Source of the DNA: Oculina patagonica
Taxonomy: Eukaryota
DNA: 64,000 nucleotides
Assembly (NCBI RefSeq): GCF_052425735.1
Contig: NC_135760.1
Coordinates: 22,816,001 to 22,880,000 of the forward strand
Direction: 5' to 3'
The stretch's first letter is position 1, and every line of letters starts with the position of its first letter. This document shows, in pieces, positions 1 through 51,436 of this stretch. Below the pieces are notes generated by a model. It was not told where the DNA came from, ran no database searches, and was given only the letters and a program-made list of their open reading frames with translations. The position numbers were made by a program, and so were the translations under genes.

Positions 1-757
1 CTCGGTACCCATGTTTGGTTGCCTTAGCTAGAATGTGCAGTGAAGTGTCCCCATCACTGTTCTTAACACTCAGAGCTTGCACGATATCCTTTCTGCTTAA
101 TCTGGCGTCCTCTTCAGCAAGAAGAAGTTTCAAGATCACATCAAAACTCTTGGAGTAGAATGCCAAGGACTGATCTTCTACTTCAGAGTCGGCCTCCGCG
201 GAATTGGCGAGGACAAGATGGTTGGCGAGAATATGAAAAGGTGTCTCTCTATTCAAGCCATCTTTTGCCCAGAAAAGACTCACTTCTTTCGCGATCAGCA
301 TCGAAACTACTTTCTCGAAATTAGCGACCTTCGCACTGATGCTCATGTTTTCTAGCCGCGTTGATTCTGACAGCAACGCTTTGTAAAGGTGGCGAGCAAC
401 TAAATGAAGTGCAGTTTCGTTTGATGAGGAAGATCTTTGAGCCGCATCGAATCCTTCATCGTTTAACAACCAATCGACCGCTTCGTACTTTCCAAACATG
501 CTCGCCAAGTGAAGCAGGGGTAACTGAAATTGCTTGCTACTTTCTGGGACATTTTTGTTCTTCTTCCAGCCGGTGGAGAGGAGTTTATGGACCTGTTTTT
601 TGAAGTCATCTTTGTTATTGCCACGCGTGACACGAGATGGGCTGAAGATCGTTGCATTCATCGATGAACTGAATCGTGGGGCCAGGGCTTGCAGTGAATT
701 GATAACATAGTGGTGCCTGATTTCACAGTCTTTCGGGCACAACGGTGTGTGAAACAT
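1..757 (-). CDS. Partial gene (3' part runs off the window): His/Cys motif plus degenerate ankyrin-repeat protein, paralog of 5236-11004
   Basis: Not in the ORF track because it is open to the window edge. Manual translation from ATG 757: MFHTPLCPKDCEIRHHYVINSL...FQLPLLHLASMFGKYEAVDWLLNDEGFDAAQRSSSSNETALHLVARHL...AKVANFEKVVSMLIAKEVSLFWAKDGLNRETPFHILANHL...LSVKNSDGDTSLHILAK. No stop between 757 and 1; first upstream in-frame stop at 815-817. The start codon is uncertain. Confidence 0.8.
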   Translation of the reverse strand, partial: MFHTPLCPKDCEIRHHYVINSLQALAPRFSSSMNATIFSPSRVTRGNNKDDFKKQVHKLLSTGWKKNKNVPESSKQFQLPLLHLASMFGKYEAVDWLLNDEGFDAAQRSSSSNETALHLVARHLYKALLSESTRLENMSISAKVANFEKVVSMLIAKEVSLFWAKDGLNRETPFHILANHLVLANSAEADSEVEDQSLAFYSKSFDVILKLLLAEEDARLSRKDIVQALSVKNSDGDTSLHILAKATKHGYR

Positions 758-1879
758 TGTGAGTTCAAAACCGAAGTAGTTTTGTAAATCGTTTCGATCT
801 GCTCGTTCGTGTTTCTAATCCATCAGTCGCTTCTTCACCTCACGTCTTCAAGGCAACTGGAGCATTCAACGCGAATCGGAGAACTTTATGGCAGCACAGT
901 TGAAAAATTAAAACCCACAGCTATCGACGAAGCGAAATACTTTCCAAATAAATTCAGAACGGATAATCGTTCTTTGCAGCTTTCTCAACGCGCCGCCATT
1001 CGAACGCCAATCTTCACCACCCGCGCGCAAGGAATTGCGGGATGGTTCGGTTTGGAAAGTGCCCGCGCGCGGGAAAACCATGTGCATAAACAATGATTTG
1101 ATTTCTAATGATCGGATTTGACTTGCGGTCGAAAAATCCTTCTGTTTTACGACTTTGGTGAATAATTTGAAAGTATCAAGGAAATCGAAGATATAGAATG
1201 CATTTGTAAGCTGCATCGGCCCCCAATGCCTATATAAAATTCCCTTTACATGATCGACTCCGGTTCGACTGCAACACGTTGTGAAAGGTCACATCTACGG
1301 CTCGTATAGTCTGCTCCCCTCGTGGAAAAATCCATAAAATCAATGGAAAAATTTCAATTAAGCTTACCTTCCGTGGACGATTCTCCACACGCGGCCATAG
1401 CCAAACAAGCGTTAAAAATCTCTCCAACCGTCCAACCGAAAATTCCTTCCTCTTGAGACTCTCTTTAGTTAACCGACTTTCAGCAAGAAATCGTCTTTTT
1501 AGCGGACCGCAAAGCACGTCTCTATGGGGGGTCAAAACAATGCGTTATTTCCTATCTCTTGGGATTGGTCATACCACAAGTTACTTGTCATGATCATATC
1601 TATAACATACATTTGCCAGACTTCTACCGAAGAACCATTCTGGCCACCCTGGGTGTTCGGTATTTCTTCGTTGTTTATCTTTTGCGGCTTAATTCTGAAC
1701 TGACGTTCTCTGCGTACAACGTAAAAAAAAAATCGTCTCATTTTCTACCTTGAACTTCTTGTGAAGAAAAGACCATTTAATTTTTGCAATAATTTTTTTT
1801 TACCAATACTACTTTCTGCAAGATTTTTTTTGCATCATCCATGTTTGTTGCTTGATTTGTTTCCCTTTCTTAGTTACTT

Positions 1880-2336
1880 CCCGGCGTATCCAATCGAACA
1901 AAATCGAACCAAAAATCAATCGAACCCAATCGAACACCAGTCGTTCGATTGGGTTCGGTAATCGAACAAAATCGAACATCTATTTTGCTGTGAGTTCGAT
2001 TTTCGAACCAATCGAACACAATCGAACTCAATCCGATTTGATTTTGATCCGAATCCGTCTCTTTATAAGTAACGGACGGTGCACCGTAAAAATTTTCCGC
2101 AATATAAACAAGCAGGAGTTCGGTAATTGAACGTTCGACTGAGTATGATTGTCGACTGTTCGGTAATCGAACGTTCGATTTTGCTCGATTGTCGACTGTT
2201 TGGCAATCGAACTTTCGATTTTGTTCGATTGACCAAATTTTTATTGTGAGTTCGATTATGTTCGATTACCGAACCCAATCGAACGATTGGTGTTCGATTG
2301 GGTTCGATAACCGAACGTTCGATTGGATACGCCGGG
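1880..2336. mobile_element. Non-autonomous DNA transposon with CCCGG...CCGGG TIRs, 6-bp TSD and polarised AATCGAAC subterminal repeats
   Basis: TIR cccggcgtatccaatcgaac / gttcgattggatacgccggg; TTACTT on both sides (1874-1879, 2337-2342); many tcgaac/gttcga motifs. Confidence 0.85.
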
Positions 2337-4040
2337 TTACTTGTGCACGATTTTTTTTCTCCTACTTTTCTTGTGCAAGATTTTTTTCGTTATTGGGCAG
2401 CCCCCCTCCCTCCCCCTGCCTAAAAAAATGAAATGGTCCGTTCCTAATCACTGACCGCGAAGGAGACACGGGCTAGCGGACGAACCGTATTTCCTTGAAT
2501 CACAACCAATTGCCCTCTTTGGTGAAAATATTTAAAATAATCGCCCCCTCTAATAATTGTCCCCTCCATCCCGACCTCCCTCTAATAATCAACCCCCACT
2601 CCTTGTACTTTCCCCTTCTTTAACCCCCCCACCCCCTTGTCAAGCTTAAAAAATGACTAAGTATTTTGACGCTGTTAGTCAAAGAAAATTCATTGAGAAC
2701 GCGTAGAAAGTAGAAAGCCAGTGTTTAGAACACTTGTACGCTTGGTGGGATAACAAAACAAACTACTGAATGATACTGACTGCTACTTCCAGCGAGCGAG
2801 ATGTGAAATAATCTCCCCCCGGTTAATTGCCTCCCTTTGAATAATAATTGTCCCATATTTTGTGCAAAAAATAAAATAATTGTCATGGCAATAATTCAAA
2901 GGAAGATGCTATATTAAAAGGGAAATATTTTGGGCGACATTAAGAATTCAGGACATTGGGGTAAAAACTGGTGATTTTGTAGATGCCCAAATTGTTTGAT
3001 TGTTGTTTTTGTCATTTTTGGTGATAGGAGTGGGGGTTACGGGTTTGAAATTGTTAAGGGTTTCTGATTTGCCAATGGTGCCCAACAGTTTCCCTGGAAA
3101 AAGCAGCCTGTCAAAAGTCCATTTCATTTTAGTTTTGCTATGACCTAAATTTTAAGAAAAAAAGTGAAAATTGAGCAACACTACAATGTTGCTATGGCAA
3201 TTAATTTTTTTTAAATTAAAGAAAAAATAATACACAAAATTGCTATTACAGTGTACTGGGTATTTACCCATACTTGGTTATGCTGTAAGCCAGTTAAGCT
3301 GGGTTACCTGTGGTTATTTCAAAATATATGTGCAACATTAAAAAATTAATTTATATTTGCAACAATGTGTGAAGTGCGTGACAGCTTTAATTGATAGGGG
3401 TGGTGAATGGTCCTTCAAAAATGCATGTCTCGCAAAAATTTAGCCAAATTTCAGGGGTCTCATCGTCTCAAAGTTTTCTTTGACGCCTTCTCAGAGTCTT
3501 GATTTCTTTAACAAGGCTAAAAAGGTCTTGGGCTCGCAGAAAAGATATCAGTCTTGCTGTCTCGCATTTACCATTTGACACCCCTATTGATATGAAATAC
3601 ATCTATATTTACATTACATGTAAATACACCTTATACAGATTATATAATGTCTGGTGTCTGTATCCGAATGTTAAAAGGAAGTAGGTTGTCTATCGTAACT
3701 CATCTTAATTTTCCTCATCAGTAAACATTCTTGTTACTTTCAGATTTTTATTTTAAAAAGTTAAAAAGCCATTGTTTTGAGGCTTCCTTTAATATGAAAG
3801 CAATTTTGTACATCAGAAAAAGACATAGCCCCTGTCTCTCCCCTCCCTTGGACAACTTTTTGACTTGCCCCGTTTAATTAACTTGATTCCTTTTTAAATA
3901 GATCAAAACCAACAAAAGAAGTTAATTTGTAGCAATATTGCTTGCAAGAAACACATGCAGTGTAGGCTACACTCAATAAACCCCTTAAGACAGCTACTAT
4001 GTTGGAGGATAGTACCGATACCACAAGCTGAAAGCTAAGA

Positions 4041-4185
4041 TAGAGTGATTTTATTTAACCCGTGAAACAACATCTAACAATTAGTGCTAAATAGTGAAAA
4101 CTAAACAAAAGAAAACAATGGAATAAGTGTCTAATAGTATCTATTTGAGTAGTAACTATTTCACGGTTGAAGTAAAATCACTCTA
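4041..4185. mobile_element. Small MITE
   Basis: tagagtgattttatttaacccgtgaaa ... tttcacggttgaagtaaaatcactcta imperfect terminal inverted repeat. Confidence 0.6.
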
Positions 4186-4441
4186 ATGCCAAAAATGAAC
4201 AGTACTGTTGTGAAATTTTGAGGACAACATTTTTAGCCAAGGGCATTATCTTCCAATACACCAGCAAGCCATAGAGGGGTAAATTATTATTTTGTGGGTA
4301 AAATAACTGTAAGTGAATCGGTTTACTTATTTTTTTTAACACTGAAACCCACTGTTTGATTTTGTACCGAGTGATCTGTTTTGTCCAATGAGAGCATGCG
4401 GAAATTATTCAGTGGGTATTTCCACCCCCAAAAGCAAAGAA

Positions 4442-4662
4442 ATAAAAATAAGCGAAAATAAGCCACGACGTTTCGAACTCATCTTGAGTTCATTATCAAG
4501 TAGATATGAGTAAAATAACGGTCGAGTTAAGTTTAAATATAATATACTCTATCACCTCTATTTGCATTTAAACTTAACTCGACCGTTATTTTACTCATAT
4601 CTACTTGATAATGAACTCAAGATGAGTTTGAAACGTCGTGGCTTATTTTCGCTTATTTTTAT
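4442..4662. repeat. Near-perfect ~97-bp-arm palindrome; each arm contains a minimal hammerhead-like motif (PLE-type 3' end)
   Basis: Arm 4442-4538 is the reverse complement of 4566-4662 (one mismatch seen); motif CTAC-TTGATAA-T-GAACTC-AAGAT-GAGTT(C/T)-GAAAC-GTC-GTGG at 4601-4641 (+) and 4463-4503 (-). Confidence 0.8.
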
Positions 4663-5046
4663 ACTTAATTGTATATCAAAATGTTCTCTCATTAAAAGCA
4701 AAGAAGCTCAAATATTTTATTGTTCCTGTTACAACAACCATTACAGGGGCAGATCCAGAAAATTTGGAAAGAGGGGGACAAAAAAACAGTGGCAATGTTG
4801 TTCGTGGAAATGTTGCTTACAGCATTCTGGTGCATTTGTGAAAAGGGGGACAGCCCCCTTGGCCCGCCCTTCCCCCTCTTTATCTGCCCTGCATTTTTGT
4901 GACATGGGAGTTGTACTCTTTACTAAGTAAGAGAAAATAATTGTGTATAAAAAAATTTCCCCCTCTCCGAATTTTTTGCATCTGCCTCTGTAATTGGTGT
5001 TGCTTTAAAACAGATTGTGGTTAAATAAAGGTTTTATTAATATTTA

Positions 5047-5077
<31 letters not shown>
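5047..5077. repeat. (TTA)n microsatellite
   Basis: attattattattattattattattattatta. Confidence 0.9.
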
Positions 5078-5079
<2 letters not shown>

Positions 5080-5235
5080 CTAATATAAGAGTAATATACA
5101 AAGCTCATTGCACCCAGAAAAATGGTAAAATATGCCAAATTAATGTAATAAACCCATCCACTTTCCAAATAACTTGGGCAAATAATATATCTCCCACCCC
5201 TTGCCAAAGAAAAAGAGAACAGATGGAAATATACC

Positions 5236-8200
5236 CTAATTTAAGGGAAAATCATTTGCATGGATAACTTGTAAGCACTTGCATTGTAGCCTGTCTATGA
5301 GCTTAAGTCTTTTGCGAAGAAGTTCTTTCTTCTTTCTTGTTTGCTCCAACAGCTCCTTTTGCTTTTGCTTCATCTCACCTCCCCTTAATTTCATTTTTTT
5401 CGCATTCAATTTGAGCTCTGATTGAATCTTGTTCAAATTATCACGTGCAATAGTAATGTGCATTTGTAACGTCCCTGCTAAGACCAATTCCTGTTTTACA
5501 GATGCCACCCTGTCCCTGATCAATTGCAGCCTATTGTGATATTCTGCAATGTAACACTGCACAATTCTTTCCTTGGATGCACTACTGATTTTACAATCTG
5601 CCGAGAGAATGAAATCAACAAGGCTCTCAGGCTCCTCGCCCATTAAGCGCACACCCATTCCTGTTCCAGGACCATCCTGTTCTTGAACAGTAGACGTGTC
5701 ATGCTGGCCTTCTGAAAGAAAATATAACAAAAACAGTAACATAAATCATGATGTCATCATGTGTGTTACTGTATGGGCTAGAAGGCTTGATGCCAGCTAG
5801 TTGGCCAAAAGCATCTTGTCCACTTATCTTAGTCATTTAAGAAAACAAAAGCATCTCCTTGTTCTATTGCTTTTAGAATATGAGCCAGAAATTTCTGTGC
5901 TGAGTAGTCAACAAGGTGCATCCAAATTGATTATTGCTTATAGAGAACAAGGGCCAGTTGTCTAATCATTTAGGTCATAACTTCGTACAAGATTTACCAT
6001 ACAAATCTGGTTACAAGTAAGCCCGGGATAAATTAAGGTAGATGGGCCTATAACCAGGTGGGCTTATAAGAGGGAGGGCTTATAACCGGAATTTTGAAAT
6101 ACACTATTCAGAACTCTGAATGTAAAATGCATCAACCTTTCATTTGTACTATGCTCTTGTGGAAGTGCAGTTTTACCTTGGGTTCCAACTGATGTTACTA
6201 GCACACTTTTTTGCATGAGGTCTCTGAGGTACTCCAACAGCCACTGACCGTAAATACTTTTCTGCAGTATTGACTCAACATCTAGTCCAAATTTGTTACA
6301 CTCCTTCAAACAGCTTGACAGAATCTGAAGTGACTCTGACTCAGGGATATTCTGTTGTCCCTTCAGTAAAAAATGGACAAACACTCTGAACAAGTGAACA
6401 TAGAGGAGAGCCGCTGATACAGGGACATTTGACGAGATCAGTTCAGCCATTGCATGAAGAACTGAATTCCCATTCTTATCCTTGGCTGAGAACAGTGATA
6501 TGGCATGGCTGTGCCGATTCAGAGTCTTCAAGATGCTCACGACAACTTCAGACAAAAAGACACTGCTACTTGAGCTCTGGTGACGCAACAACTGCATGGT
6601 CATGTGTAATGGCGTTTCCTCGGTTCTAGCAGTGTGAATAAGAGGATGAAAGCCCAATTCTGAAAGCACCCACAACGCCTTGTGCTTTCCTAGAAGGCAA
6701 GCAAGATGTACAATGGGCAGGCGCAAGGACGGCATGGGTGAAGGGACAACACTGGACATGTCCCAATGGCTTTTCTTCAAGTAGTCCTTGAGTTTTGCAC
6801 ATGACTCAATTTCCACTGTGGCTAAATCGTTGCTCAGGTGGTCGGGTGTAGCACAAAGAAGTTGCACCAACTTGTGATGTGTTAAACTACACTCAGGGCT
6901 GCACAGATAAGTGTGTTTCCCTGAAAAATGAAGCATCAAGAGCTCATTTTAAAATGGGACATTTTCATTAACATTACCTAGCCTGCAGGGTAGGTATTTT
7001 CTGTGGGGGAGAGTTTTCTTTACCACCTCCCATAAAACCAACCCCTGATGATATTATGACTTACCACTCCCTTAGACCTGTATCAGTCGCGGCTTGTGAC
7101 ATGCCTTACAAACTTGAAAAAAAAAAAAAAATAAAAATAAAAAAATAATAATAAAATAAAAGATACCTGTACTTGACTGTCGTCTCTCAGAATTCACTTG
7201 CATTGTTGGCACATCACTGTCATGTGTCAAAGTTTCTGTAACTGGTGCTCTTGTATCTACGCTCTGAGAAGGTGCTGACACAGACACAGTCGTTAATGAA
7301 GTTTGACTTGTACATCCATTGGATGCTTCGACTGATGAATGATTAGTCAGAAGGGTTGTGGTTCCACAGGAATTTGTCACTTGAGTTGGTGCTATAGTTT
7401 GAGGTATCCTCGCTGAAGCAGATGCAGATGCAGTGGTTGGACAGTTAGTTGGTAAGGTGATGGTCTCTGTGGAATTTTCAGTTGGAGTTGATACTACAGC
7501 TTGAGGTATCTTCATTGAGGCAGTTTCAGTGGTTGATGTGGATTGATTTGGCCATCCTTTGGGTGCTTGGACTGATAGAGAGTTTGTTGCTAAGGCGATG
7601 GTCCCTGTGGAATTTCCAACTTGAGTTGACGCTACAGTTTGTGGTGCCCACAATGTGGTGGAAACAGTGGTTAATGCATTGTGATTTTGACATCCATAGG
7701 GTGTAGATGAACAGTCAGTTGGTAAGGTGATGGTCCCTGTGGAATTTCCAGTTGAAGATACTACAGCTTGAGGTGTACTCATTGATGCAGTTGTAGTGGT
7801 TGACGTGGATTTATTTGGCCATCCTTTGGGTGCTTGGTCCGCTGGAGAGTTAGTGGAAGAGGTGGTGGTTTCTGTGGAATTTACTGCTTGAGATGATACT
7901 ACAGTTTGTGGTGCCCACAATGTGGCAGAGACAGTGGTCGATACATTGTGATTTTGACATCCATTGGGTGAAAGAACAGATGGACAGTTGGTTGGTAGGG
8001 TGATGGTCCCTGTGGAATTTCCTGCTTGAGTTGATACTAGAGATTGTGGTGCCCACAATGATGCAGAGACAGTGGTTGATGCATGGTGATTTTGACTTCC
8101 ACTGGGTGCTTGGACAGATGAACAGTTAGTGGAAGAGGTGATGGTCCCTGTGGAATTTCCAGATTGAGTTGACACTACAGTTTGTGGTACCCACCACAAT

Positions 8201-11004
8201 GAGGTAGAGACAGTGGTTGATGTATTGTGATTTGGCCAACCTTTGGGTGTTTTGACTGATAGAGAGTAAGATGGTAAGGCAATGGTCCCTGTAGAATTTC
8301 CAACTTGAGTTGCAGCTTGAGGTATCCTCGCTGAGGCAGACACAGTGGTTAGTGCAGGTTGTTTTTGCCATCCATTCGGCACTAAGGCAGATGGACAGTT
8401 AGTTGGTAAGGTGATGGTCCCTGTGGAATTTCCTGCTTGAGTTGACACTACAGCTTGAGGTATCCTCACTGAAGCAGATACAGTGGTTGTTGTGGATTGT
8501 TTTGACCATCCATTGGGTGCTAGAACAGATGGACATTTAGTTGGTAAAGCAATGGTCCCTGTGGAATTTCCAGATTGAGTTGACACTACAGTTTGTGGTA
8601 CCCACCACAATGAGGTTGAGACAGTGGTTGATGCATTGTGATTTGGCCATCCTTTAGGTGCTTGGACTGATAGAGAGTAGGTTGGTAAGGTGATGCTCCC
8701 TGTGGAATTTCCAACTTGAGTTGATACTACAGCTTGAGGTATCCTGCTTGAGGCAGATACATTGGTCAATGCAGGTTGTTTTTGCCATCCATTTGGTACT
8801 AAGGCAGATGGACATTCAGCTGGTAAGGTGATGGTCCCTGTGGAATTTCCTGCTTGAGTTGACACAACAGTTGGTGGTGCCCACAATGAGGCAAAGACAG
8901 CAATGGATGCAATGTGATTTTGACATATATTTGGTGCTAGGACAGATGGAAAGTTAGTTGTGGTATTTTCAGTTTGAGTTGATACTAAAACTTGAGGTAT
9001 CCTCACTGAAGGAGATGGAGTGATTGATGTGGGTGGCTTTAGCATTCTATTGGGTGCTTGCACTGATGGAGTGTGAGTTGGTACGGTGATGGCCCCTGTC
9101 AAATTTCCAGTTTGACTTGACACTACAGTCTGAGGTATCCTCACTGAGGTAGATAATACAGTGGTTGAAGCAGGTTGTTTTGGCCATCCATTGGGTGCTA
9201 CGACAGATTGACAGTTAGTTGATAAGGCAATGCTTCCAGTAGAATTTACTGCTTTGGCATGAGTTGAAACCACAGTTTGTGTTGACCTCATTGAGGCAGT
9301 TGAATGGAAAGACGGATAGTTAGTGGACAAGCTTACAGTTGGGAAGTGATTTGCTGCTTGAGTTGACAGATTTGTATTGCCACTTTGACGTGAACCTGAC
9401 ATCTTAGTAACAGTATTTAACTGTGTTGTGTCTTCTTCTGTTATTGCATCTTCACACGTCTCTTTAGCAACTGAGTTTTGTTGCTTTGCACATTCTGTAC
9501 TTTGTTCTTCTGGAACTGTTGCGGTTACCTGACTGGCAACAACTCTTCTGTTACTCCTTGCCAATTCATCTTCATGAAGTATCTGCGTCATTGTTTCTCC
9601 AGCTTTATTTACACAGTCAAACAATTCAATGACTTGCCTGTGAAGCAAATATCCATCAGTACAAAGCTGCTTAAATGTGTGGATCATCACTTTGAAAATT
9701 CCTTCCAACAACTGTCTCTGGTTAAGCAATTCTTGGCGCATTGACTCATCACGACCAAGAAAGACAAATTTAACAGCCTTAATCTGATTGGTTAGTCTTC
9801 TGATTTGCCGAGAACACACATGGAGAATGGTGTCTTCATTAGCCTTGTCCCTCGCCAAAAGAATTTCACAGTTGTACTTTGCAAAAAGTTGCAACATGCG
9901 CTGAAATGTCATTACTTTCTCCTGATGGGAGGAAGATGGCATATATTGATGCATGGATGTCATAACTGTGTGAAGCGGCAAATTCTGAGTGAAATCCATG
10001 TCTGAGCGATCAAGGCACGCGTTTAATAAACACTTCAGTAAGTCATATTTACCAAACAACACTGCCAAATGAACCAAATGATGAATACGATTATTTAATT
10101 TGGGATCTAAACTCCAGGCACCCTTCATGGCGAGCTTCAAATGATTTTCAAGATTTTTCTTCAGCTTGTAATCATCTGGAGCACAAATGGCCAGAAGAAG
10201 AGGATTGTGCTTTGATCTACAATCACTTTTACACAGTTGAGTGTGAACTCCAGCAAGCACATCCCTCACTGGTATTTTCACACTTTTACTAAGTTTTATC
10301 TTTTTTCTTGGTGGTTGTTTGAGTTGCTCAGTCGACTGATGGGAAGTTTTGTTTTTCCTGTCAACACCAGAGGCACTCTGACTTATCCCTGAAACTTCCT
10401 TGGATGTTGTTTCATCTATCGCAGAGCATTCTACATCCACACTACAAGAAGATGGTTGTTCAGAATCTAACACTGTCATGTAAGAAATATCTCTAAATAT
10501 TGAAGGTGTATTCTCTGACAGACGTGTGTATGAGACCATTAGATCTTCTAGACCAGCCATACTGAAATCCCTCATTTTCTCACCGTTATCTAAAGCGCCT
10601 TGATTTTGACTAGATTGATCCTCTGCAATAGAAGCTGATGAATGCTCTAGATTACTAGAAGCATCAACTGTCCATGGATACGGTTTTGTGTTCACACTAG
10701 ACGATTGTCTTTCACTTAATGAATCCACTGCGGAAGCCGGCTTTTCTGATTGATCATCTTCCCTATGTGCATGTGTATCCTCAGTTTCGACAATCACACC
10801 TGAAGAGGACTGCCGTTTACTCAATGCATCCTCTGTTATGGAAAATGTTTCTTTCAATATGGCTGCAAATGAAAATGTTTGATCACCAAAAGTGTCCACA
10901 CTTGAAGGTGTACAATCTGTTCCATTGTTCATATTAGAACTAGACTGTCTTTGATTTGCCGGATATTGTTCTTCAGCATTAGAATCTGGTTCTTCTGATG
11001 ACAT
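5236..11004 (-). CDS. ~1685-aa predicted nuclear protein: two His/Cys plus ankyrin-like modules, central Thr/Ser repeats, C-terminal coiled coil; join(11004..7167, 6920..6177, 5711..5236)
   Basis: Three ORF-track ORFs joined by GT-AG introns in matching phase 1 (ACAG|GTATCT..TTTCAG|GG; CAAG|GTAAAA..TTTCAG|AA); 5058 nt in total. Ankyrin-type motifs LVHLAVLFGK, NLPLHTV, DTILHV, ETPLHM, GNSVLHAM; NLS-like PPRKKIKL; heptad-rich exon 3; AATAAA on the minus strand at 5038-5033. Confidence 0.85.
7300..9340 (-). repeat. Coding tandem repeat, ~138-nt (46-aa) unit, about 14-15 copies
   Basis: Anchor g(t/c)ccctgt recurs at 8006, 8144, 8285, 8417, 8555, ~8696, 8834 (spacing 132-141 nt); approximate consensus PQxVVSTQxGNSTGTIxLPTxCxSxxAPxGWxxxxxxTTVSxS. 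Confidence 0.9.
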
Positions 11005-11702
11005 GGTTGTAGTTGAAATTCAAATGAACATTAGATCAGTTTTCATCAACAAGGTCTTCAGTAGATCTGTGGGTCTTGTTCATACCTTCAGAAGTTATTT
11101 GGTTTCTATTTGGCTGAATTCTTCCCATGGAAACTGACAATTCTAGTGTACATTTGAAGGCTTTTAGACACATTGAAGAATCCCATGCTGTAAACAATGT
11201 ATAGGGATCAAATGTCCAGAAGTCAGGAAAATTCAATTCACATGCACACAATTATTTTGCTTTCACAAAAAACACCAGTCAGTATCTTGTTTCTTTGTCG
11301 ACGTATATTGACACTTTGTTAAAAGATAAGCAGCTGCAGATCAGCTTATTCACTTGAAGTAGTTGCAAGTGCTGTTGGGTGTTCCAGAATCTTGTTTACA
11401 TCTCGGGGCGGTGCTTACATAACATGTGCTCTGACAAAAACTGGTGAAACGTTCAGATAATATCGATTTCAACCTACTCTTTTCGATAACAACGCATTTA
11501 ACTGACGGTTAGCTGCATAAAAATGCTAAATGCTTTTGCAGATACGTCCTTTTAGCCATTAATTGGAGCTTTGCTTTGCCGAAAAAGTGCAGCGAAAGAC
11601 AATACAACTTGCCGCCATTTTGTTCTGGGTGATAGGATAATTAGGTAGACATACATGAAGCACATACCCCGCATAAGTTCCTCGGTGTCCCTCGTTACCA
11701 AA
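11005..11702. promoter_or_regulatory. Bidirectional promoter / 5' UTR region between the ankyrin-module gene and P2X; YY1-like GCCGCCATTTT at 11611-11621
   Basis: Divergent start codons only ~700 bp apart; YY1-consensus match. Confidence 0.55.
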
Positions 11703-20700: not shown

Positions 20701-23700
20701 AACCAACTGTTTTTAAGAGGTATTATGCAACCAGGGTTGTGTTATGGGTGTGGGACAAGGTTGCTGTCTTGCCAAATGTTTTCACTCCCCACCCCCTTTC
20801 TGAATTTTCTGTAACCACCTTGTGTACTGCTTTTAAAGATTACTTTTTCAACACTTCTTTTTTCCTTTTATAGGAAAAATGTTCCACTGCTTGATACTGC
20901 AAAGGATTTCACACTGCTCATTAAAAACAATGTACAGTTTCCCAAGTTTGGTGAATCACTGTAAGTATTAGTAATCATCTCATAAGCTCAGAATGTTGTG
21001 TTGTTTCAAAAAATATCAATACCCTACCATGGAAGGTTTTTTGAACGAGTTGTCAAAGCATGAGCCTGGGCTCCCTGTGGTTGTTATAAAAAAATATGTG
21101 GTTTCTTGGAGATATGAAATTTATCTTCTTGTGTTCAATCTATATCTCACGAGTAAGCTTCAAAGATAAATTTCATATCTCCACACACCATGTATTATAC
21201 TCTATACATCACCTTATTGTTTGAAAGTAAATGGGTCGTAAGTTGTTGTTAAAGGACTAATGCAAAAAACTTTCAGAGTTTAGTGTTTAGGCAATATCAA
21301 AGCATTAAATATTTTTTATTTGTCAATTAATCCATTTTGATGTAGGAGAAACATCATTACAGAAAATGCAACCTACTTAAAGACCTGTAGTTACGACCCT
21401 GACACTGATCCTCTGTGCCCTATATTCAATCTTGGAAAAATTGTAGAACTGGCAAAAGTTGACTTTAATGATATAGCATATCAGGTATGTTGGTTTCTAT
21501 TTAGAGGGATTCACTGAGGGGTATTTCCCTTTCTATCATAACTGAGAAAGTTCTAGCGCAATCATTGGTTGAAGGTTATGGTTAATGAGATTATAGACCA
21601 TCCCAGATTATCAACCATTCGGAAAACTTGAGATACTTTGTAAAAAGGCAGCTGGAATGGAACATTTTAGAAGAAATTTCCACACATTTGTCGACTTCAA
21701 GTGAAAAATGTGATCTTATGAACTGTCCCCAGGGGGGTACTCCGGCTTGTAAATGACGGGGATGATCGAAGGATTTTTTGGGGTTTGAAATTTTCGATTC
21801 TGGGATTTTTTTGGGTAAGAAGATTTGGCAAGTATTTTTTTGGGTGACTTGATTCAAATAGGGGACCTTTTAGGGTATAAAAAACAAACTAAAGTGCGTT
21901 GGCGTATTTATGGTATGATGAATAATCAAACGCGAGCGTTATTGCCCCTCCTGGCAATTTAGGGGTAATTTGACAAGGGATTTTTTTAGGGGTTATTTTT
22001 GGTCCAGGGATTTTTTTGGGTAATGTCGGAAGACTTAGGGATTTTCTGGGGTCCTGAGTTTTGCCTTCATTCGATCATCCCGTCATTAACAAGTCGGAGT
22101 ACCCCCCTGGGGAACTGTCACACACACCAATGACTTTGCACTGATTAAGCACCTAATTTGCTGGTAAATTTTACACTTTGACTTCTAGATCATAGAAAAT
22201 AATGCCATAAAATGTCTGTAACATTGATAGAAGTGAAACCATTCACCTAATGGCTTGTCGTTCCACTTGAGTTTTTGAACATTTTTATTTTTATGATGTC
22301 ATTTCTGTGGCCTATAAGAGTGTATGTATACCATGGGGGAATTTGGTCGATTTGTAAAATGTAATCTAATCTATATGTACCTGTACCATGGTATGTGTCA
22401 CCCAGAGCGTTTGGTTTCTATTTCCTCCCACACTCAAACACATCATCCTTACATGTGATTTTGCCTATGTGGGAGAGAACAAAAGATCATGGAATTTGCA
22501 CGGCGCAGAGCACAAGCCAGGCAAAAGATCTGATAACGAAAGCGCAATAAGATTTCACGCGGAAACAACAGACCATGACATTCATCCGGATTATGTAGAA
22601 ATTTTAGAAAGATTTGTCATCAATAGGCAACAACGTCTATTCCTAGAAGCGCTGCATTTTATCTAGGACATTAACTGTGTGAATGAGCATGTGCATTTCC
22701 CACAAGTTTATTTAACATTGGGAACATCCCTAGAGACCGGCCGCGTATGAAAAACTTATTATGCAAAAACTGAACCAATTTTAACTCTGATGAAGGTAGC
22801 AGAGAGTTACCGAAAATTCAGTTTTATACGTTTTTGCCAACATTTTTAGATCAGATACAAACCAAAATTTTATTACATCATCCTTTTTTATTTTCTTTAT
22901 TCTAGGGTGGGGTCATGGCCATAGTCATCACATGGAATTGTAACTTTGACCCACTGGCATATTTTTGTGAACCTAAGTATTCATTCAGAAGGTCAAACAA
23001 CATATGAACGTTTGGTGGTTTTGTTTTTTTTTGGGAATTTTAAATTAGGGGGGATTTTTATAAATGCTTTTATTTAAGTCTGTATCTTATTGATAACTGT
23101 TGTTTGTTAGTTTGGATCCCTTACCTTTAAAAGCTTGCAAATATCTTGTGTTAAAAAAATTGTTTGAAAAAGATTTGCTTGCTACTACAAAGCTACAATC
23201 CTGGAAAAAAGTTCTTGGGACACTTAACAGAATAGTACTGAGTGACAAATCCTTTTGAGTTGTTTTCCGAGCCCCCCTCCCCCCTAAAGAAAACAATGTT
23301 GAAATATTGTTGGATGGGTTGTAGTCAACATTGCATTGGGGGTGGGAAAGAGGAAGTGAAGACAATACCCACCTTTTATCAAAAAGATGAAGTGTCCCAA
23401 GACTTTTGTCTAGGATTGTAGTTAGCATAAAGTAAGTTTTATTAGTTTTTTTTTTTTTAATTGACAAATCTTAATGCCCTTTCTTTGACACAGTACTCTT
23501 ACATTAACCTTATTCTTCTGTGACACGCTGAAAACCCTTGTAAATATTAGCAGCAATAACAGTGCGATCAATGATTCATAATGAGTGATTGAAGTGCTTG
23601 TTTTTTTTTTCTGTTTAGACTGGATGATTCCAAATCACCGATTGCTCCAGGCTATAATTTCAGGCATGTATAATTTTTATTTGTTGGTATTGATACATGT

Positions 23701-49092: not shown

Positions 49093-51436
49093 ATGGCACC
49101 AACAATAGTCTCAGGTATTGTAGAACTTATTTACCCTAGAAATGTTTTACAGTTTGTATGTATGGGAGTAAAGTGCAGACCCCGAAGGCACTTTCCGTCT
49201 CCGGTATTAATTAAGGGAAAATGCTTTATGACTAATATGCAACCTGATGTTTACAGGTACATGTAACTCTCCATCAGTCGACATGTTACTGCAGAAATTA
49301 GTACCACCTTTTAATAATGATTCATAACCAAGGCAGAAAAAGGTGAATAAGAAAACTGGCACCCAAGTGGCCTATTTTTCCCTCGGCCGTTTAGGCTCTC
49401 GAGCTTCTCTGCCTTCGTCTCGGTAAAAAATTATCCGAAATATTCAATCGGATCTGTTTGATTTCGGTTACTTTTGCACCCTTTTACAACAGTGCTCTTT
49501 CAGTTATAAATTAATCGTCAATCGTATTGTTTATTCCATTTAAATGTTGATTTGTAGGACGAGAGCAAGGAAAAAAGTGGAAATCATATAAGATCAAGAA
49601 AGAAAGTACTGTAAGGAGCAAACGTGTAACTCGAAACCAGTTGAAAGGTGATCTTGCAAGTCACACAACGACCCGTTACAAAGCAAAGTCAGGCAAGAGA
49701 TTCTACAATTTGAGGCCACGAAAATCTACACAAGGTAAGTTATTGAGTAAGGGTGCGAACGAGCTATTTGAACCCAAGCAAGCGAACAAGCTATTTGTAA
49801 CCTTAGAAAAGTCCGAGAGAGAGGCCATCGGTGTTAAGACCCAGTGTGGACCTAAACAACCGCAACGCTGGAAGCAAAATGCTTGCAACGCACTGCGCAT
49901 TTTGATTGCACTCAGCTTTTGCTTTAAAAGATGTCGAGGTTGGTGTTGGGTTCAATGAAACAGATTGGACAGCAAAACGCGTACGCAGCAAAACTCAAAA
50001 AGCGGGACGCTGTAAAAGGGGGACAGGACGGGACGGGACGGGACGGGACGGGACGGGAAAATCCCAGAGCCCTCGCTCCTACTGGTCAGCGACACGGACC
50101 ACAAGGAGTAGGTACGTTTTATTCAGGTTTATTAGTGACATTTAATGTACCAACTGATCAGGATATTTCTGCGTCCCTCTTAACCTGAGATCATGCCTTC
50201 CCTCCCTCAAAAAGAACGCCTGATCGCAGGTTAGGTCCCTCTTGGGTACTGAGCTTTGTAGCATTAGTTGTTTTTCACCGTGAAATATATGTTTACGAGA
50301 ACACTGATTTCAATCAATCACCACTACGATGTAAACAAATCAAGGGATTTATAAAGATAAGGTGATAGGGCTAAATCACGCAAGGAGAAAAAACTGTCTC
50401 TATACCAATATTAACTTGAAAGAAATGCAGAAGATTTAAAGGCAAGTAGCTTTATCACTTTCTGGCTAAGTCTTGTTGAGTGTTAGTTCATTCTCGATAA
50501 TATCACCAAATTCATGTTTCTTAAGTAACCCAAGCTCCTTCCTGTTTACAACGAACGACATAAATATTCATTTTCGCTATCAGTTCTAACTGTATCATTC
50601 TATACCAAAACCGATACCCTTTTGACACTATGACGAAAAATTACAGTAATCGTTTTCACATCGTGACACCAATATCTTCCCGCCAAAACAGCGCTACATG
50701 AAAATGGGGGCAGGAAGCGGGTATAGAAGGGCTGCAACCATCTACTCTCGCGTTCTTGTGCGTTGAAAACTATAGAGGCTGTAAAAAATCTAATACTGAA
50801 CGTAAACTATAATCAGCATGATTTGGTTTAAAAAGCAAACTTGCAAAACTAGAAAGACTTTTTAAAATAGGAGCAAACTTGCAAATATGTTTTTTGGAAG
50901 AATTCGCAACAAAGAGAAATCATATAACAAAGTTATTTTGGTCTCTTGAAAAGTTGGTTTAGTTGATGTTAAAGCTCTCGTTGGAGTAATGACATGTTAT
51001 TAAAGCGAATTTCAAAAATTCGCGTTAATTTTATTTTTTACATGTTAATTAAAAACATCTAACCAGAACTTTTCGCAAATTCGCGTTAATTTTATTACGC
51101 GTAAATTTTGTTCGCGTTGTTAAAATGCTTCGTTACATTCCTATAATAAGGTATCTAACATTTTAAACTGATCGGCACGAACATTTTGGTTTACAGGTGC
51201 GCTTAAAACAGAGGTACGCTTCTGTTGGCAGTTTACTTAGTTTTAATGTACAGTACTTCAACACAGTCGGACCATAGGAAATCCAACAATAATGGATTGA
51301 TTTTGTAGAACAGTATTTGACAAATGACAGGAGTCAATTAGAAAGTGAGGATGTTAACTATGGGACATATGGTGTGGATAAAAATGGATTTCATTGGATA
51401 GGCTTGAAAAGTGAGATTCACGTGTATATAGCTTAG
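49093..51436 (+). CDS. Small Lys/Arg-rich protein; exons 49093-49114 and 49558-49734, then probably 51197-51213 and 51314-51436 (3' exons uncertain)
   Basis: CAAGATGGC start; CAG|GTATT, TTTGTAG|GA and AAG|GTAAGT sites in phase 1; MAPTIVSGREQGKKWKSYKIKKESTVRSKRVTRNQLKGDLASHTTTRYKAKSGKRFYNLRPRKSTQG. Confidence 0.55.
50020..50057. repeat. (GGGAC)n simple repeat
   Basis: gggacaggacgggacgggacgggacgggacgggacggg. Confidence 0.85.

What the first reader, a model, noticed from the sequence alone, without database searches (positions are those of the whole stretch)
1..11004. Tandem gene family built on an unnamed 'H-T-x-L-C-x3-C-x3-H + degenerate ankyrin' module (3 copies in 2 genes)
Seen in the sequence: three divergent copies share the same N-terminal motif - FHTPLCPKDCEIRHH (~710-754), VHTQLCKSDCRSKHN (~10204-10248) and KHTYLCSPECSLTHH (~6874-6918). 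Each is followed ~40-75 aa later by (L/I)(L/V)HLAxxxGK, then xPLH/ALH, then A(K/R)DxxxxxxLH/FH ankyrin-type repeats. The left-edge gene is missed by the ORF track. The large gene has an NLS-like PPRKKIKL, no signal peptide and a terminal coiled coil. Inference: the invariant H/C/C/H spacing across otherwise low identity suggests a Zn-binding cap on an ankyrin solenoid, in a lineage-expanded nuclear regulator family. I recognise no named domain for it.
Basis: partly seen in the sequence, partly recalled or inferred. Interest (0 to 1): 0.75.

Follow-up and report, generated by a model that had tools for sequence, protein, structure and literature searches.

The report
Coral zinc-knuckle-capped ankyrin gene family
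The window holds two coral genes with three copies of a real, conserved but unstudied protein module, an irregular ankyrin-repeat domain preceded by a short, probably zinc-binding His/Cys motif, which belongs to a family found so far only in cnidarians and multiplied in this coral.

Summary
H-T-x-L-C-x3-C-x3-H lies on the minus strand at 713-751, 6877-6915 and 10207-10245. Each copy is followed by HLAxxxGK and ankyrin-type repeats.

The three copies are homologous (BLASTP E 2e-14 to 3e-8). The genome holds at least 20 such modules. Most sit in a tandem cluster just left of the window.

All 45 aligned modules and all 20 own-genome copies keep the four ligand positions. These are the most conserved columns of the roughly 290-residue module. 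The first His is Cys in an old subfamily shared by Hydra, Nematostella, Actinia and Acropora, and the Cys-Cys spacer varies from 3 to 7. That pattern is typical of a metal site.

AlphaFold2 models (pLDDT 85 and 93) give an irregular ankyrin solenoid, with the motif as a confident non-helical N-terminal extension. No Pfam family or PDB sequence matches the motif.

The large gene has three exons (11004..7167, 6920..6177, 5711..5236) and encodes 1685 aa. The order is NLS-like motif, module 1, S/T-rich 46-aa repeats, module 2, C-terminal coiled-coil-like tail. One splice is seen in transcript-like contigs.

Zinc binding, nuclear location and function are inferred, not shown. Named relatives are all cnidarian "uncharacterized proteins". 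I rate it a new variant of a known kind, of moderate interest.

The parts
1..757 (-). Left-edge gene, first coding exon. It starts at Met 755-757 and runs off the window. It holds one whole module, and the exon ends 136 bases left of the window at a GT donor.
   Evidence: Orthologues start M-x-H-T-P-L-C. Pfam Ank_2 E 1.4e-9.
713..751 (-). Motif copy 1: HTPLCPKDCEIRH (H-x3-C-x3-C-x3-H), two residues after the start Met.
488..511 (-). First canonical ankyrin repeat mark HLASMFGK of copy 1.
   Evidence: Profile positions 77-117 match DARPin and ankyrin repeats.
7167..11004 (-). Large gene, exon 1: start Met, acidic and Ser-rich N-terminal region, NLS-like motif, module 1, S/T-rich repeats. The donor is G|GT at 7167|7166.
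   Evidence: Contig depth drops to 0 over 6941-7139, and a contig piece ends at about 7166.
10291..10314 (-). NLS-like PPRKKIKL (aa 231-238), 15 residues upstream of motif copy 2.
   Evidence: Conserved as PP(R/K)KK(I/L/T)(K/R)L in orthologues and in the C9 paralogue.
10207..10245 (-). Motif copy 2: HTQLCKSDCRSKH (module 1 of the large gene).
9505..10245 (-). Module 1 of the large gene (motif plus irregular ankyrin domain, about aa 254-500).
   Evidence: Alignments A1, A2 and A5. It pairs with C9:24.408 Mb module 1 in the tree at 100/100 support.
7438..8960 (-). Tandem array of 138-bp (46-aa) S/T/P/Q/N-rich repeats, about 11 copies, inside exon 1.
   Evidence: Composition S 16% and T 18%.
6921..7166 (-). 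Intron 1 (GT..AG, phase 1). It contains an A/T-rich low-complexity tract.
   Evidence: Zero depth over 6941-7139 in X1 and X4. The junction itself is not listed as a joint.
6177..6920 (-). Large gene, exon 2, which equals module 2. The motif begins at the third codon of the exon.
   Evidence: AF2 model pLDDT 92.9, pTM 0.89. VIA Z 15.3 to the ASB7 ankyrin domain.
6877..6915 (-). Motif copy 3: HTYLCSPECSLTH.
5712..6176 (-). Intron 2 (GT..AG on the minus strand). It contains a dispersed repeat at about 5946-6144.
   Evidence: Joint 5711->6177 with ends CT..AC in contigs of X1 and X4.
5236..5711 (-). Large gene, exon 3: linker plus a K/L/Q/R-rich, coiled-coil-like C-terminal tail and the stop codon.
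   Evidence: In-frame junction. Heptad score reached by 7 of 500 shuffles. C-terminal coiled coils are present in Nematostella, Actinia and Hydra relatives.

Best explanation
The three copies are instances of one cnidarian protein module of about 250-290 aa.

The module starts with a short knuckle, [H/C]-x3-C-x3-7-C-x2-5-H, that most likely binds one Zn2+ through its four His/Cys residues. The knuckle runs directly into the first helix of an irregular five- to six-repeat ankyrin solenoid. It would act as a metal-stabilised N-terminal cap, and the ankyrin groove would be the protein-binding surface.

The module occurs alone, in small genes of about 300 aa such as the left-edge gene. It also occurs once to three times in long proteins, followed by a disordered S/T-rich region and a C-terminal coiled-coil-like tail. 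The large gene here has this long form: 1685 aa, three exons, two modules.

These are intracellular proteins with no signal peptide. The large type carries a conserved basic NLS-like motif, so it is probably a nuclear scaffold or adaptor.

Shown: homology of the copies, family size, conservation of the tetrad, the ankyrin fold, one splice junction, and purifying selection. Inferred: zinc binding, the capping role, nuclear location, oligomerisation through the tail, and any cellular function.
For: Motif and repeat marks sit at the stated coordinates, and the copies are pairwise homologous.

A profile search of the window's own genome gives 20 modules, and all 20 carry the tetrad. A profile of the 35-residue cap alone retrieves 19 of these same 20 loci and nothing else below E 0.1. 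In this genome the cap therefore occurs only with the ankyrin domain.

In the exhaustive HMMER search, all 52 fetched single-stretch family members have the motif, and none of the generic multi-ankyrin hits does.

In a 45-module alignment, C6 and H14 are invariant. C10 is 43/45; the two exceptions are alignment shifts, since regex extraction finds the tetrad in all 45. H2 is H in 41 and C in 4. These are the lowest-entropy columns, below the ankyrin hallmark G and H.

The first ligand is Cys in the subfamily conserved from Hydra LOC100215049 to Acropora LOC107337783, Nematostella and Actinia. Spacers of 3, 4, 5 and 7 occur between the two Cys.

AF2 model of copy 1: pLDDT 85.2, pTM 0.85, with motif residues at pLDDT 84-86 and non-helical. 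AF2 model of copy 3: pLDDT 92.9, pTM 0.89, with motif residues at pLDDT 90-97, non-helical, followed by helix 16-23.

Fold matches are ankyrin domains: IkappaB-zeta Z 15.5, Swi6 Z 14.9, ASB7 Z 15.3, and DARPins. Most alignments start at model residue 10-20, just after the motif.

Gene model: joint 5711->6177 in two runs, zero depth in both introns, phase-compatible GT..AG sites, and a 1685-aa open CDS.

dN/dS is 0.24-0.44 between paralogue pairs.

The architecture of module(s), disordered region and C-terminal coiled coil recurs in Nematostella LOC5513704 (2 modules), Nematostella LOC116619003 (3 modules), Actinia LOC116296361 and the Hydra protein.
Against: No coordinates were available, so the clustering of the four ligands in the models was not measured, and no metal was modelled.

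Pfam Ank models do not reach significance on the two modules of the large gene. Their ankyrin nature rests on homology to copy 1 and on the predicted fold.

The runs that show the splice are only guessed to be RNA, and their contigs differ from the window by a few percent, so they are probably from related corals. The exon 1-exon 2 junction is not listed as a joint.

The homodimer prediction for the C-terminal tail gave no verdict, and the heptad signal is modest.

Nothing tests location or partners.
Confidence: 0.62

Rival explanations
1. The motif is a short CCCH-type (C3H1-like) zinc finger that binds RNA or DNA. The module is then a nucleic-acid-binding finger fused to an ankyrin platform, not a structural cap.
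For: The oldest subfamily reads C-x3-C-x5-C-x2/3-H with an aromatic residue between the first two Cys (CTPFC). Its second half equals the C-x5-C-x3-H of CCCH fingers. The proteins carry a conserved basic motif next to module 1.
Against: No Pfam zinc-finger family matches the N-terminal 74-80 residues of five members, even at E up to 10. No PDB sequence matches the cap profile. The first spacer (3) is far shorter than in CCCH fingers, which use 4-15 by established definition. In this genome the cap never occurs without the ankyrin domain, and it is modelled as continuous with the first ankyrin helix.
Confidence: 0.15
2. The His/Cys residues are conserved for a reason other than metal binding, for example a redox-sensitive Cys pair, a disulfide or a docking motif, and the module is simply a divergent ankyrin domain.
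For: Metal binding was not measured or modelled here. The spacing i, i+4, i+8, i+12 could also lie on one helix face.
Against: Both models place the motif in a non-helical loop at high confidence. The first position exchanges only between His and Cys (41 H, 4 C), which fits a ligand and not a hydrophobic or docking role. The spacers vary while the four residues do not. Disulfides are unlikely in proteins without a signal peptide.
Confidence: 0.12
3. The copies are decaying pseudogenes, or chance similarity in ankyrin-like sequence.
For: The two modules of the large gene give no significant Pfam hit.
Against: The ORFs are long and open, and dN/dS is 0.24-0.44. Orthologues at 52-91% identity exist in other corals. 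Transcript-like contigs cover all three exons, with introns removed. Profile E-values reach 1e-104 to 1e-125 for the window copies and 1e-18 to 1e-42 for nearly all paralogues.
Confidence: 0.02

Closest known systems
Ankyrin-repeat domains in general (Pfam Ank, Ank_2, Ank_4; DARPins, ankyrin-R/B)
   Same: Stacked helix-turn-helix repeats with TPLH/ALH and G-K/H marks. Pfam Ank_2 E 1.4e-9 on copy 1. The family profile hits DARPin and ankyrin-1 sequences at E 1e-28 through one or two repeats. VIA Z 13-15 over 150-205 residues.
   Different: The repeats are irregular, with long inserted helices. Pfam misses the two modules of the large gene. No canonical ankyrin domain in the hit lists has the N-terminal His/Cys knuckle.
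IkappaB-family ankyrin domains (IkappaB-zeta 9bor, Bcl-3 1k1a/1k1b, IkappaB-beta 1oy3, IkappaB-alpha 1nfi)
   Same: They are among the best structural matches: IkappaB-zeta Z 15.5, 205 residues aligned at 3.0 A. They have six to seven irregular repeats, and some members are nuclear regulators.
   Different: Z values are within 1-2 units of unrelated DARPins, so no specific kinship is shown, and sequence identity is 13-19%. No zinc knuckle is present in those structures' matched ranges. No evidence links this family to Rel/NF-kappaB.
Fungal Swi6/Mbp1/Swi4/Res1/Res2 ankyrin domains
   Same: These are the top reviewed-protein fold matches (TM 0.47-0.53), and Swi6 scores Z 14.9. They too are irregular ankyrin domains with inserted helices in nuclear transcription regulators.
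   Different: The similarity is at fold level only, at 15-18% identity. The surrounding domains differ (APSES DNA-binding domain), and there is no His/Cys cap.
CCCH (C3H1) zinc fingers
   Same: Three Cys and one His over about 15 residues. The C-x5-C-x3-H half occurs in the Hydra/Acropora subfamily.
   Different: The first spacer is 3 residues, not 4-15. Most family members have His at the first position. There is no Pfam match. The motif is always fused to the ankyrin domain.
Uncharacterised AlphaFold DB cluster representatives R7VCL3 and A0A1S3ICT3
   Same: These are the best full-length fold matches, covering model residues 2-287 (TM 0.69, E 1e-9) and 1-267, which includes the cap region.
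   Different: Their sequences and organisms were not available to me, so I could not check whether they carry the tetrad. Both are unnamed.

Membership tests
Ankyrin-repeat superfamily | Significant match to Pfam ankyrin models | tested here: met
   Copy 1: Ank_2 E 1.4e-9 and Ank_4 E 2.4e-7, both above the gathering scores. The two modules of the large gene give no significant Pfam hit on their own, but they are homologous to copy 1.
Ankyrin-repeat superfamily | Stacked helix-loop-helix solenoid fold | tested here: met
   AF2 models have pLDDT 85 and 93. VIA Z is 15.5 and 15.3, with 159-205 residues aligned at 2.8-3.0 A to solved ankyrin domains. Foldseek against PDB, AFDB and the Atlas returns only ankyrin proteins.
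CCCH (C3H1) zinc finger | C-x4-15-C-x4-6-C-x3-H spacing and a match to Pfam zf-CCCH models | tested here: not met
   The spacing is [H/C]-x3-C-x3-7-C-x2-5-H. Five N-terminal fragments of 74-80 aa match no zinc-finger family at E up to 10: three match nothing, two give only weak unrelated hits.
Structural zinc site (generic) | Four invariant Cys/His ligands, with only Cys/His exchanges tolerated | tested here: met
   45 of 45 aligned modules and 20 of 20 own-genome copies keep the tetrad. Position 1 is H in 41 and C in 4.
Structural zinc site (generic) | Tetrahedral clustering of the four ligands around a metal | not testable with these tools
   Structure prediction returns no coordinates and models no metal. 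Only confidence (pLDDT 84-97 over the motif) and secondary structure are given.
IkappaB family | Binding to Rel-homology dimers; signal-response degron or PEST region | not tested
   Only fold similarity, at Z values tied with DARPins.
Coiled-coil oligomerisation domain (C-terminal tail) | Heptad periodicity and self-association | tested here: inconclusive
   The heptad score is reached by 7 of 500 shuffles. The homodimer prediction gave no verdict. Relatives give weak Pfam hits to coiled-coil families, for example CENP-F_leu_zip E 0.001-0.002.

The most novel reading that the evidence does not exclude
The [H/C]-x3-C-x3-7-C-x2-5-H knuckle is an undescribed zinc-binding N-terminal cap, evolved once for an ankyrin solenoid. 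It defines a cnidarian-restricted protein family of the form Zn-capped ankyrin module(s), disordered region, coiled coil. The family is conserved from Hydra to stony corals, and its single-module members were multiplied in tandem in corals as a set of intracellular, possibly nuclear, recognition adaptors.
Probability: 0.45. Interest if true: 0.55.

Novelty: new variant of a known kind. Interest (0 to 1): 0.42.

Why it matters
Ankyrin domains are among the commonest protein-binding scaffolds, and their terminal caps decide their stability. A natural metal-stabilised cap would be a new solution to that problem. It would also be a compact marker motif for a family that current domain libraries label only as "ankyrin" or miss altogether.

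The family is conserved across about the whole depth of Cnidaria, and all named members are "uncharacterized proteins". This coral has expanded it in tandem. It is therefore a candidate lineage-specific regulator or adaptor family for functional work in Nematostella or Hydra. Nothing here links it to a particular process, so its importance is still open.

Tried and rejected
1. Homodimer prediction for the exon-3 tail, two copies: no verdict. It counts neither for nor against binding.

2. I tested whether the cap is a diverged ankyrin repeat, since HTPLC resembles the TPLH of the repeat consensus. hhalign of the cap columns against the family's own repeats gave only 3-10 aligned columns at E 0.09-0.3. 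The repeats themselves mostly fail to align with each other at this length, so the test is inconclusive and the idea is dropped.

3. Looking for a named relative gave nothing. I tried Pfam on whole proteins and on N-terminal fragments, PDB sequences with the module and cap profiles, the protein atlas, and paper searches by locus names and by keywords. All returned only generic ankyrin hits or nothing.

4. Two word-index homologue searches and the exhaustive search found no named member outside Cnidaria. This is not proof of absence. Only the best 150 of 18,478 hits are listed, and generic ankyrin proteins crowd that list.

5. I looked for a downstream coiled-coil exon of the left-edge gene in the 1.4 kb left of its donor. 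No candidate ORF was found, so its 3' end is unresolved.

6. The poly(A) raw-read runs X23 and X24 laid only 8 and 6 reads at 90-99% likeness. They say nothing about expression level.
Full report
**What is in the sequence.** Translating the left end of the window on the minus strand gives an open frame that runs off the window. It begins M-F-HTPLCPKDCEIRH-H. A six-frame pattern scan finds HT.LC...C...H only three times in the 64 kb, at 713-751, 6877-6915 and 10207-10245, all on the minus strand. HLA...GK follows each, at 488-511, 6685-6708 and 10048-10071. The three regions align over about 250 residues with 27 invariant columns. They are pairwise significant by BLASTP: E 2e-14, 5e-9 and 3e-8. 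The ORF lister omits the left-edge gene because, by its own rule, it skips ORFs that run off the source.

**Size and age of the family.** The window is G000:C3:22816001-22880000. A profile of the three copies finds 20 modules in this genome. Twelve lie at C3:22.697-22.826 Mb, so the window holds only the right-hand end of a tandem cluster. The others lie at C3:9.29, C3:22.28, C3:29.86, C9:24.41, C9:26.23, C2:10.66 and C4:9.21 Mb. All 20 carry the tetrad. Variants include CTPFCDKNKECPEHH, CTPFCDRKKDCPKHH and CTPLCFEPGLPECSNSGKHH. A profile of the 35-residue cap alone finds 19 of these same loci and nothing else below E 0.1, so in this genome the cap exists only in front of this ankyrin domain.

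In a maximum-likelihood tree, module 1 of the large gene pairs with module 1 of a two-module paralogue on C9, and module 2 pairs with its module 2, each at 100/100 support. The internal duplication is therefore older than the gene duplication. The left-edge gene is a separate lineage. dN/dS between paralogue pairs is 0.24-0.44, which indicates functional genes.

Contig C2 of the assembly has the same length (46,518,285 bases) as the contig that carries an Oculina patagonica protein of this family.

**Relatives elsewhere.** A single-sequence search found only close orthologues at 52-91% identity, all unnamed. The exhaustive profile search listed about 60 full-length, single-stretch members among its best 150 hits; the rest are giant generic ankyrin proteins. 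All 52 members that I fetched have the motif.

Every member that carries a source name is a cnidarian "uncharacterized", "predicted" or "hypothetical" protein:
- Nematostella LOC5513704: two modules plus a C-terminal coiled coil.
- Nematostella LOC116619003: three modules plus a coiled coil.
- Nematostella LOC5512877 and LOC116619005.
- Actinia LOC116296361 and LOC116306346.
- Acropora digitifera LOC107337783.
- Hydra vulgaris LOC100215049.
- Unnamed proteins from Oculina, Pocillopora and Desmophyllum.

No paper mentions these loci.

**The His/Cys tetrad.** In a 45-module alignment the four positions are the least variable columns of the whole module. C6 and H14 are invariant. C10 is 43/45, and both exceptions are alignment shifts. 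H2 is His in 41 and Cys in 4. The ankyrin hallmark Gly and His come only after these. The Cys-at-position-1 form (C-x3-C-x5-C-x2-HH) marks a slowly evolving subfamily shared by Hydra, Nematostella, Actinia, Acropora and this coral. The Cys-Cys spacer is 3, 4, 5 or 7 in different members.

Invariant ligands, exchange only between His and Cys, and tolerant spacers are together what a metal site predicts. No Pfam zinc-finger family matches the N-terminal 74-80 residues of five members at E up to 10; two fragments give only weak, unrelated hits. No PDB sequence matches the cap profile at E up to 10.

**Fold.** The AF2 model of copy 1 has pLDDT 85.2 and pTM 0.85. The model of the exon-2 module has pLDDT 92.9 and pTM 0.89. 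It leads straight into the first helix. The rest is a stack of helix pairs with several long inserted helices.

All structure searches return ankyrin domains:
- Foldseek on PDB: E 1e-5 to 1e-3.
- VIA-align: IkappaB-zeta Z 15.5 (205 residues, 3.0 A), Swi6 Z 14.9, and ASB7 Z 15.3 for the second model, with DARPins within 1-2 Z units.
- Swiss-Prot models: fungal Mbp1/Swi4/Res first, at TM about 0.5.
- The Atlas: ankyrin clusters only.

Most alignments start at model residue 10-20. The knuckle therefore lies outside the canonical solenoid, as an N-terminal extension of its first helix. The best AFDB cluster matches, which do cover the cap region, are two unnamed proteins: R7VCL3 (TM 0.69) and A0A1S3ICT3. 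I could not read their sequences.

The tools give no coordinates, so I could not measure whether the four side chains meet. This is the main gap.

**Gene models.** Contigs of two runs from two studies and two organism labels were laid on 5150-11100. The tool only guesses that they are RNA. They cover 5150-5746, 6145-6940 and 7140-11100. Depth is about zero over 5747-5945 and exactly zero over 6941-7139. Both runs show a joint 5711->6177 with ends CT..AC, which is GT..AG on the minus strand. That joint fuses ...VTSVGTQ to EGQHDTS... in frame.

For the other intron, the donor ACAG|GTATC at 7167 and the acceptor TTTTTCAG|GG at 6920 are phase-compatible. A contig of depth 25.4 has pieces ending at about 7166 and at 6919, but no joint is listed there. 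Orthologous ORFs lose similarity exactly at ...QSG|I.

The three exons (11004..7167, 6920..6177, 5711..5236) give an uninterrupted 1685-aa CDS. In order, the protein has:
- an acidic, Ser-rich N-terminus without a signal peptide;
- PPRKKIKL at aa 231-238;
- module 1 from aa 254;
- about eleven 46-aa S/T-rich repeats, roughly aa 682-1189;
- module 2 from aa 1282, exactly one exon;
- a K/L/Q/R-rich tail.

The basic motif and the 15 residues between it and the motif's first His are conserved in orthologues and in the C9 paralogue. The tail shows a modest heptad signal, with the score reached by 7 of 500 shuffles. A homodimer prediction gave no verdict.

The left-edge gene starts two residues before the motif, as its orthologues do. 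Its exon ends at a GT donor 136 bases outside the window, and its 3' end was not found.

**Interpretation.** I read the module as an irregular ankyrin protein-binding domain whose N-terminus is held by a small zinc knuckle. It is used singly in small proteins, and in one to three copies in long proteins with a disordered middle and a coiled-coil-like end. I put about 0.6 on this structural reading, of which zinc binding itself is about 0.75. A nuclear scaffold or adaptor role is plausible from the conserved basic motif, but it is untested.

The rivals are a CCCH-like nucleic-acid-binding finger (0.15) and conserved His/Cys without metal (0.12). The first suffers from the lack of any profile match and from the strict coupling to the ankyrin domain. 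The second suffers from the exclusive His/Cys exchange and the non-helical model. Pseudogenes or chance similarity are excluded.

**Comparison and novelty.** The ankyrin part is a known kind. The cap has no match in Pfam or in PDB sequences. The whole family is present in public annotation only as uncharacterised cnidarian proteins. I file it as a new variant of a known kind. It is a sound and moderately interesting finding: real, old within Cnidaria, expanded in this coral, and with a clear biochemical test. It is not a surprise of the first order, and its function is unknown.

Noticed in passing
window 5946-6144 (inside intron 2 of the large gene): Depth in the contig runs jumps to 271 and 2018, against about 25 elsewhere, with many loose ends at 6036-6095. 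A 16-bp tandem unit lies at 6043-6087. This looks like a dispersed repeat (SINE- or MITE-like) sitting in the intron.
   Followed up: no
window 7438-8960: A 138-bp (46-aa) S/T-rich tandem array lies inside exon 1. Contigs of run X4 skip 801 or 816 bases, or go back 1371 bases, within it. This suggests repeat-number differences between corals, or assembly collapse.
   Followed up: partly
The genome is therefore very probably Oculina patagonica.
   Followed up: partly
L013 (G000:C3:22.812 Mb, next gene left of the window's left-edge gene): This paralogue has a partial second motif, HTKHFPGLCSPDCFDTM, about 20 residues upstream of its complete HTPLCKPDCDLQH. Its orthologue P0045 shares it.
   Followed up: no
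G000:C9:24405343-24408795 (L005, L006): A whole-gene paralogue of the large gene has the same layout: a long ORF holding PPRKKIKL, module 1 and S/T-rich repeats, then a separate ORF of about 290 aa for module 2.
   Followed up: partly
window 4442-4662, 22783-22823, 49093-51436: Other first-reader notes on this window report hammerhead ribozyme candidates and a basic microprotein. I did not examine them.
   Followed up: no
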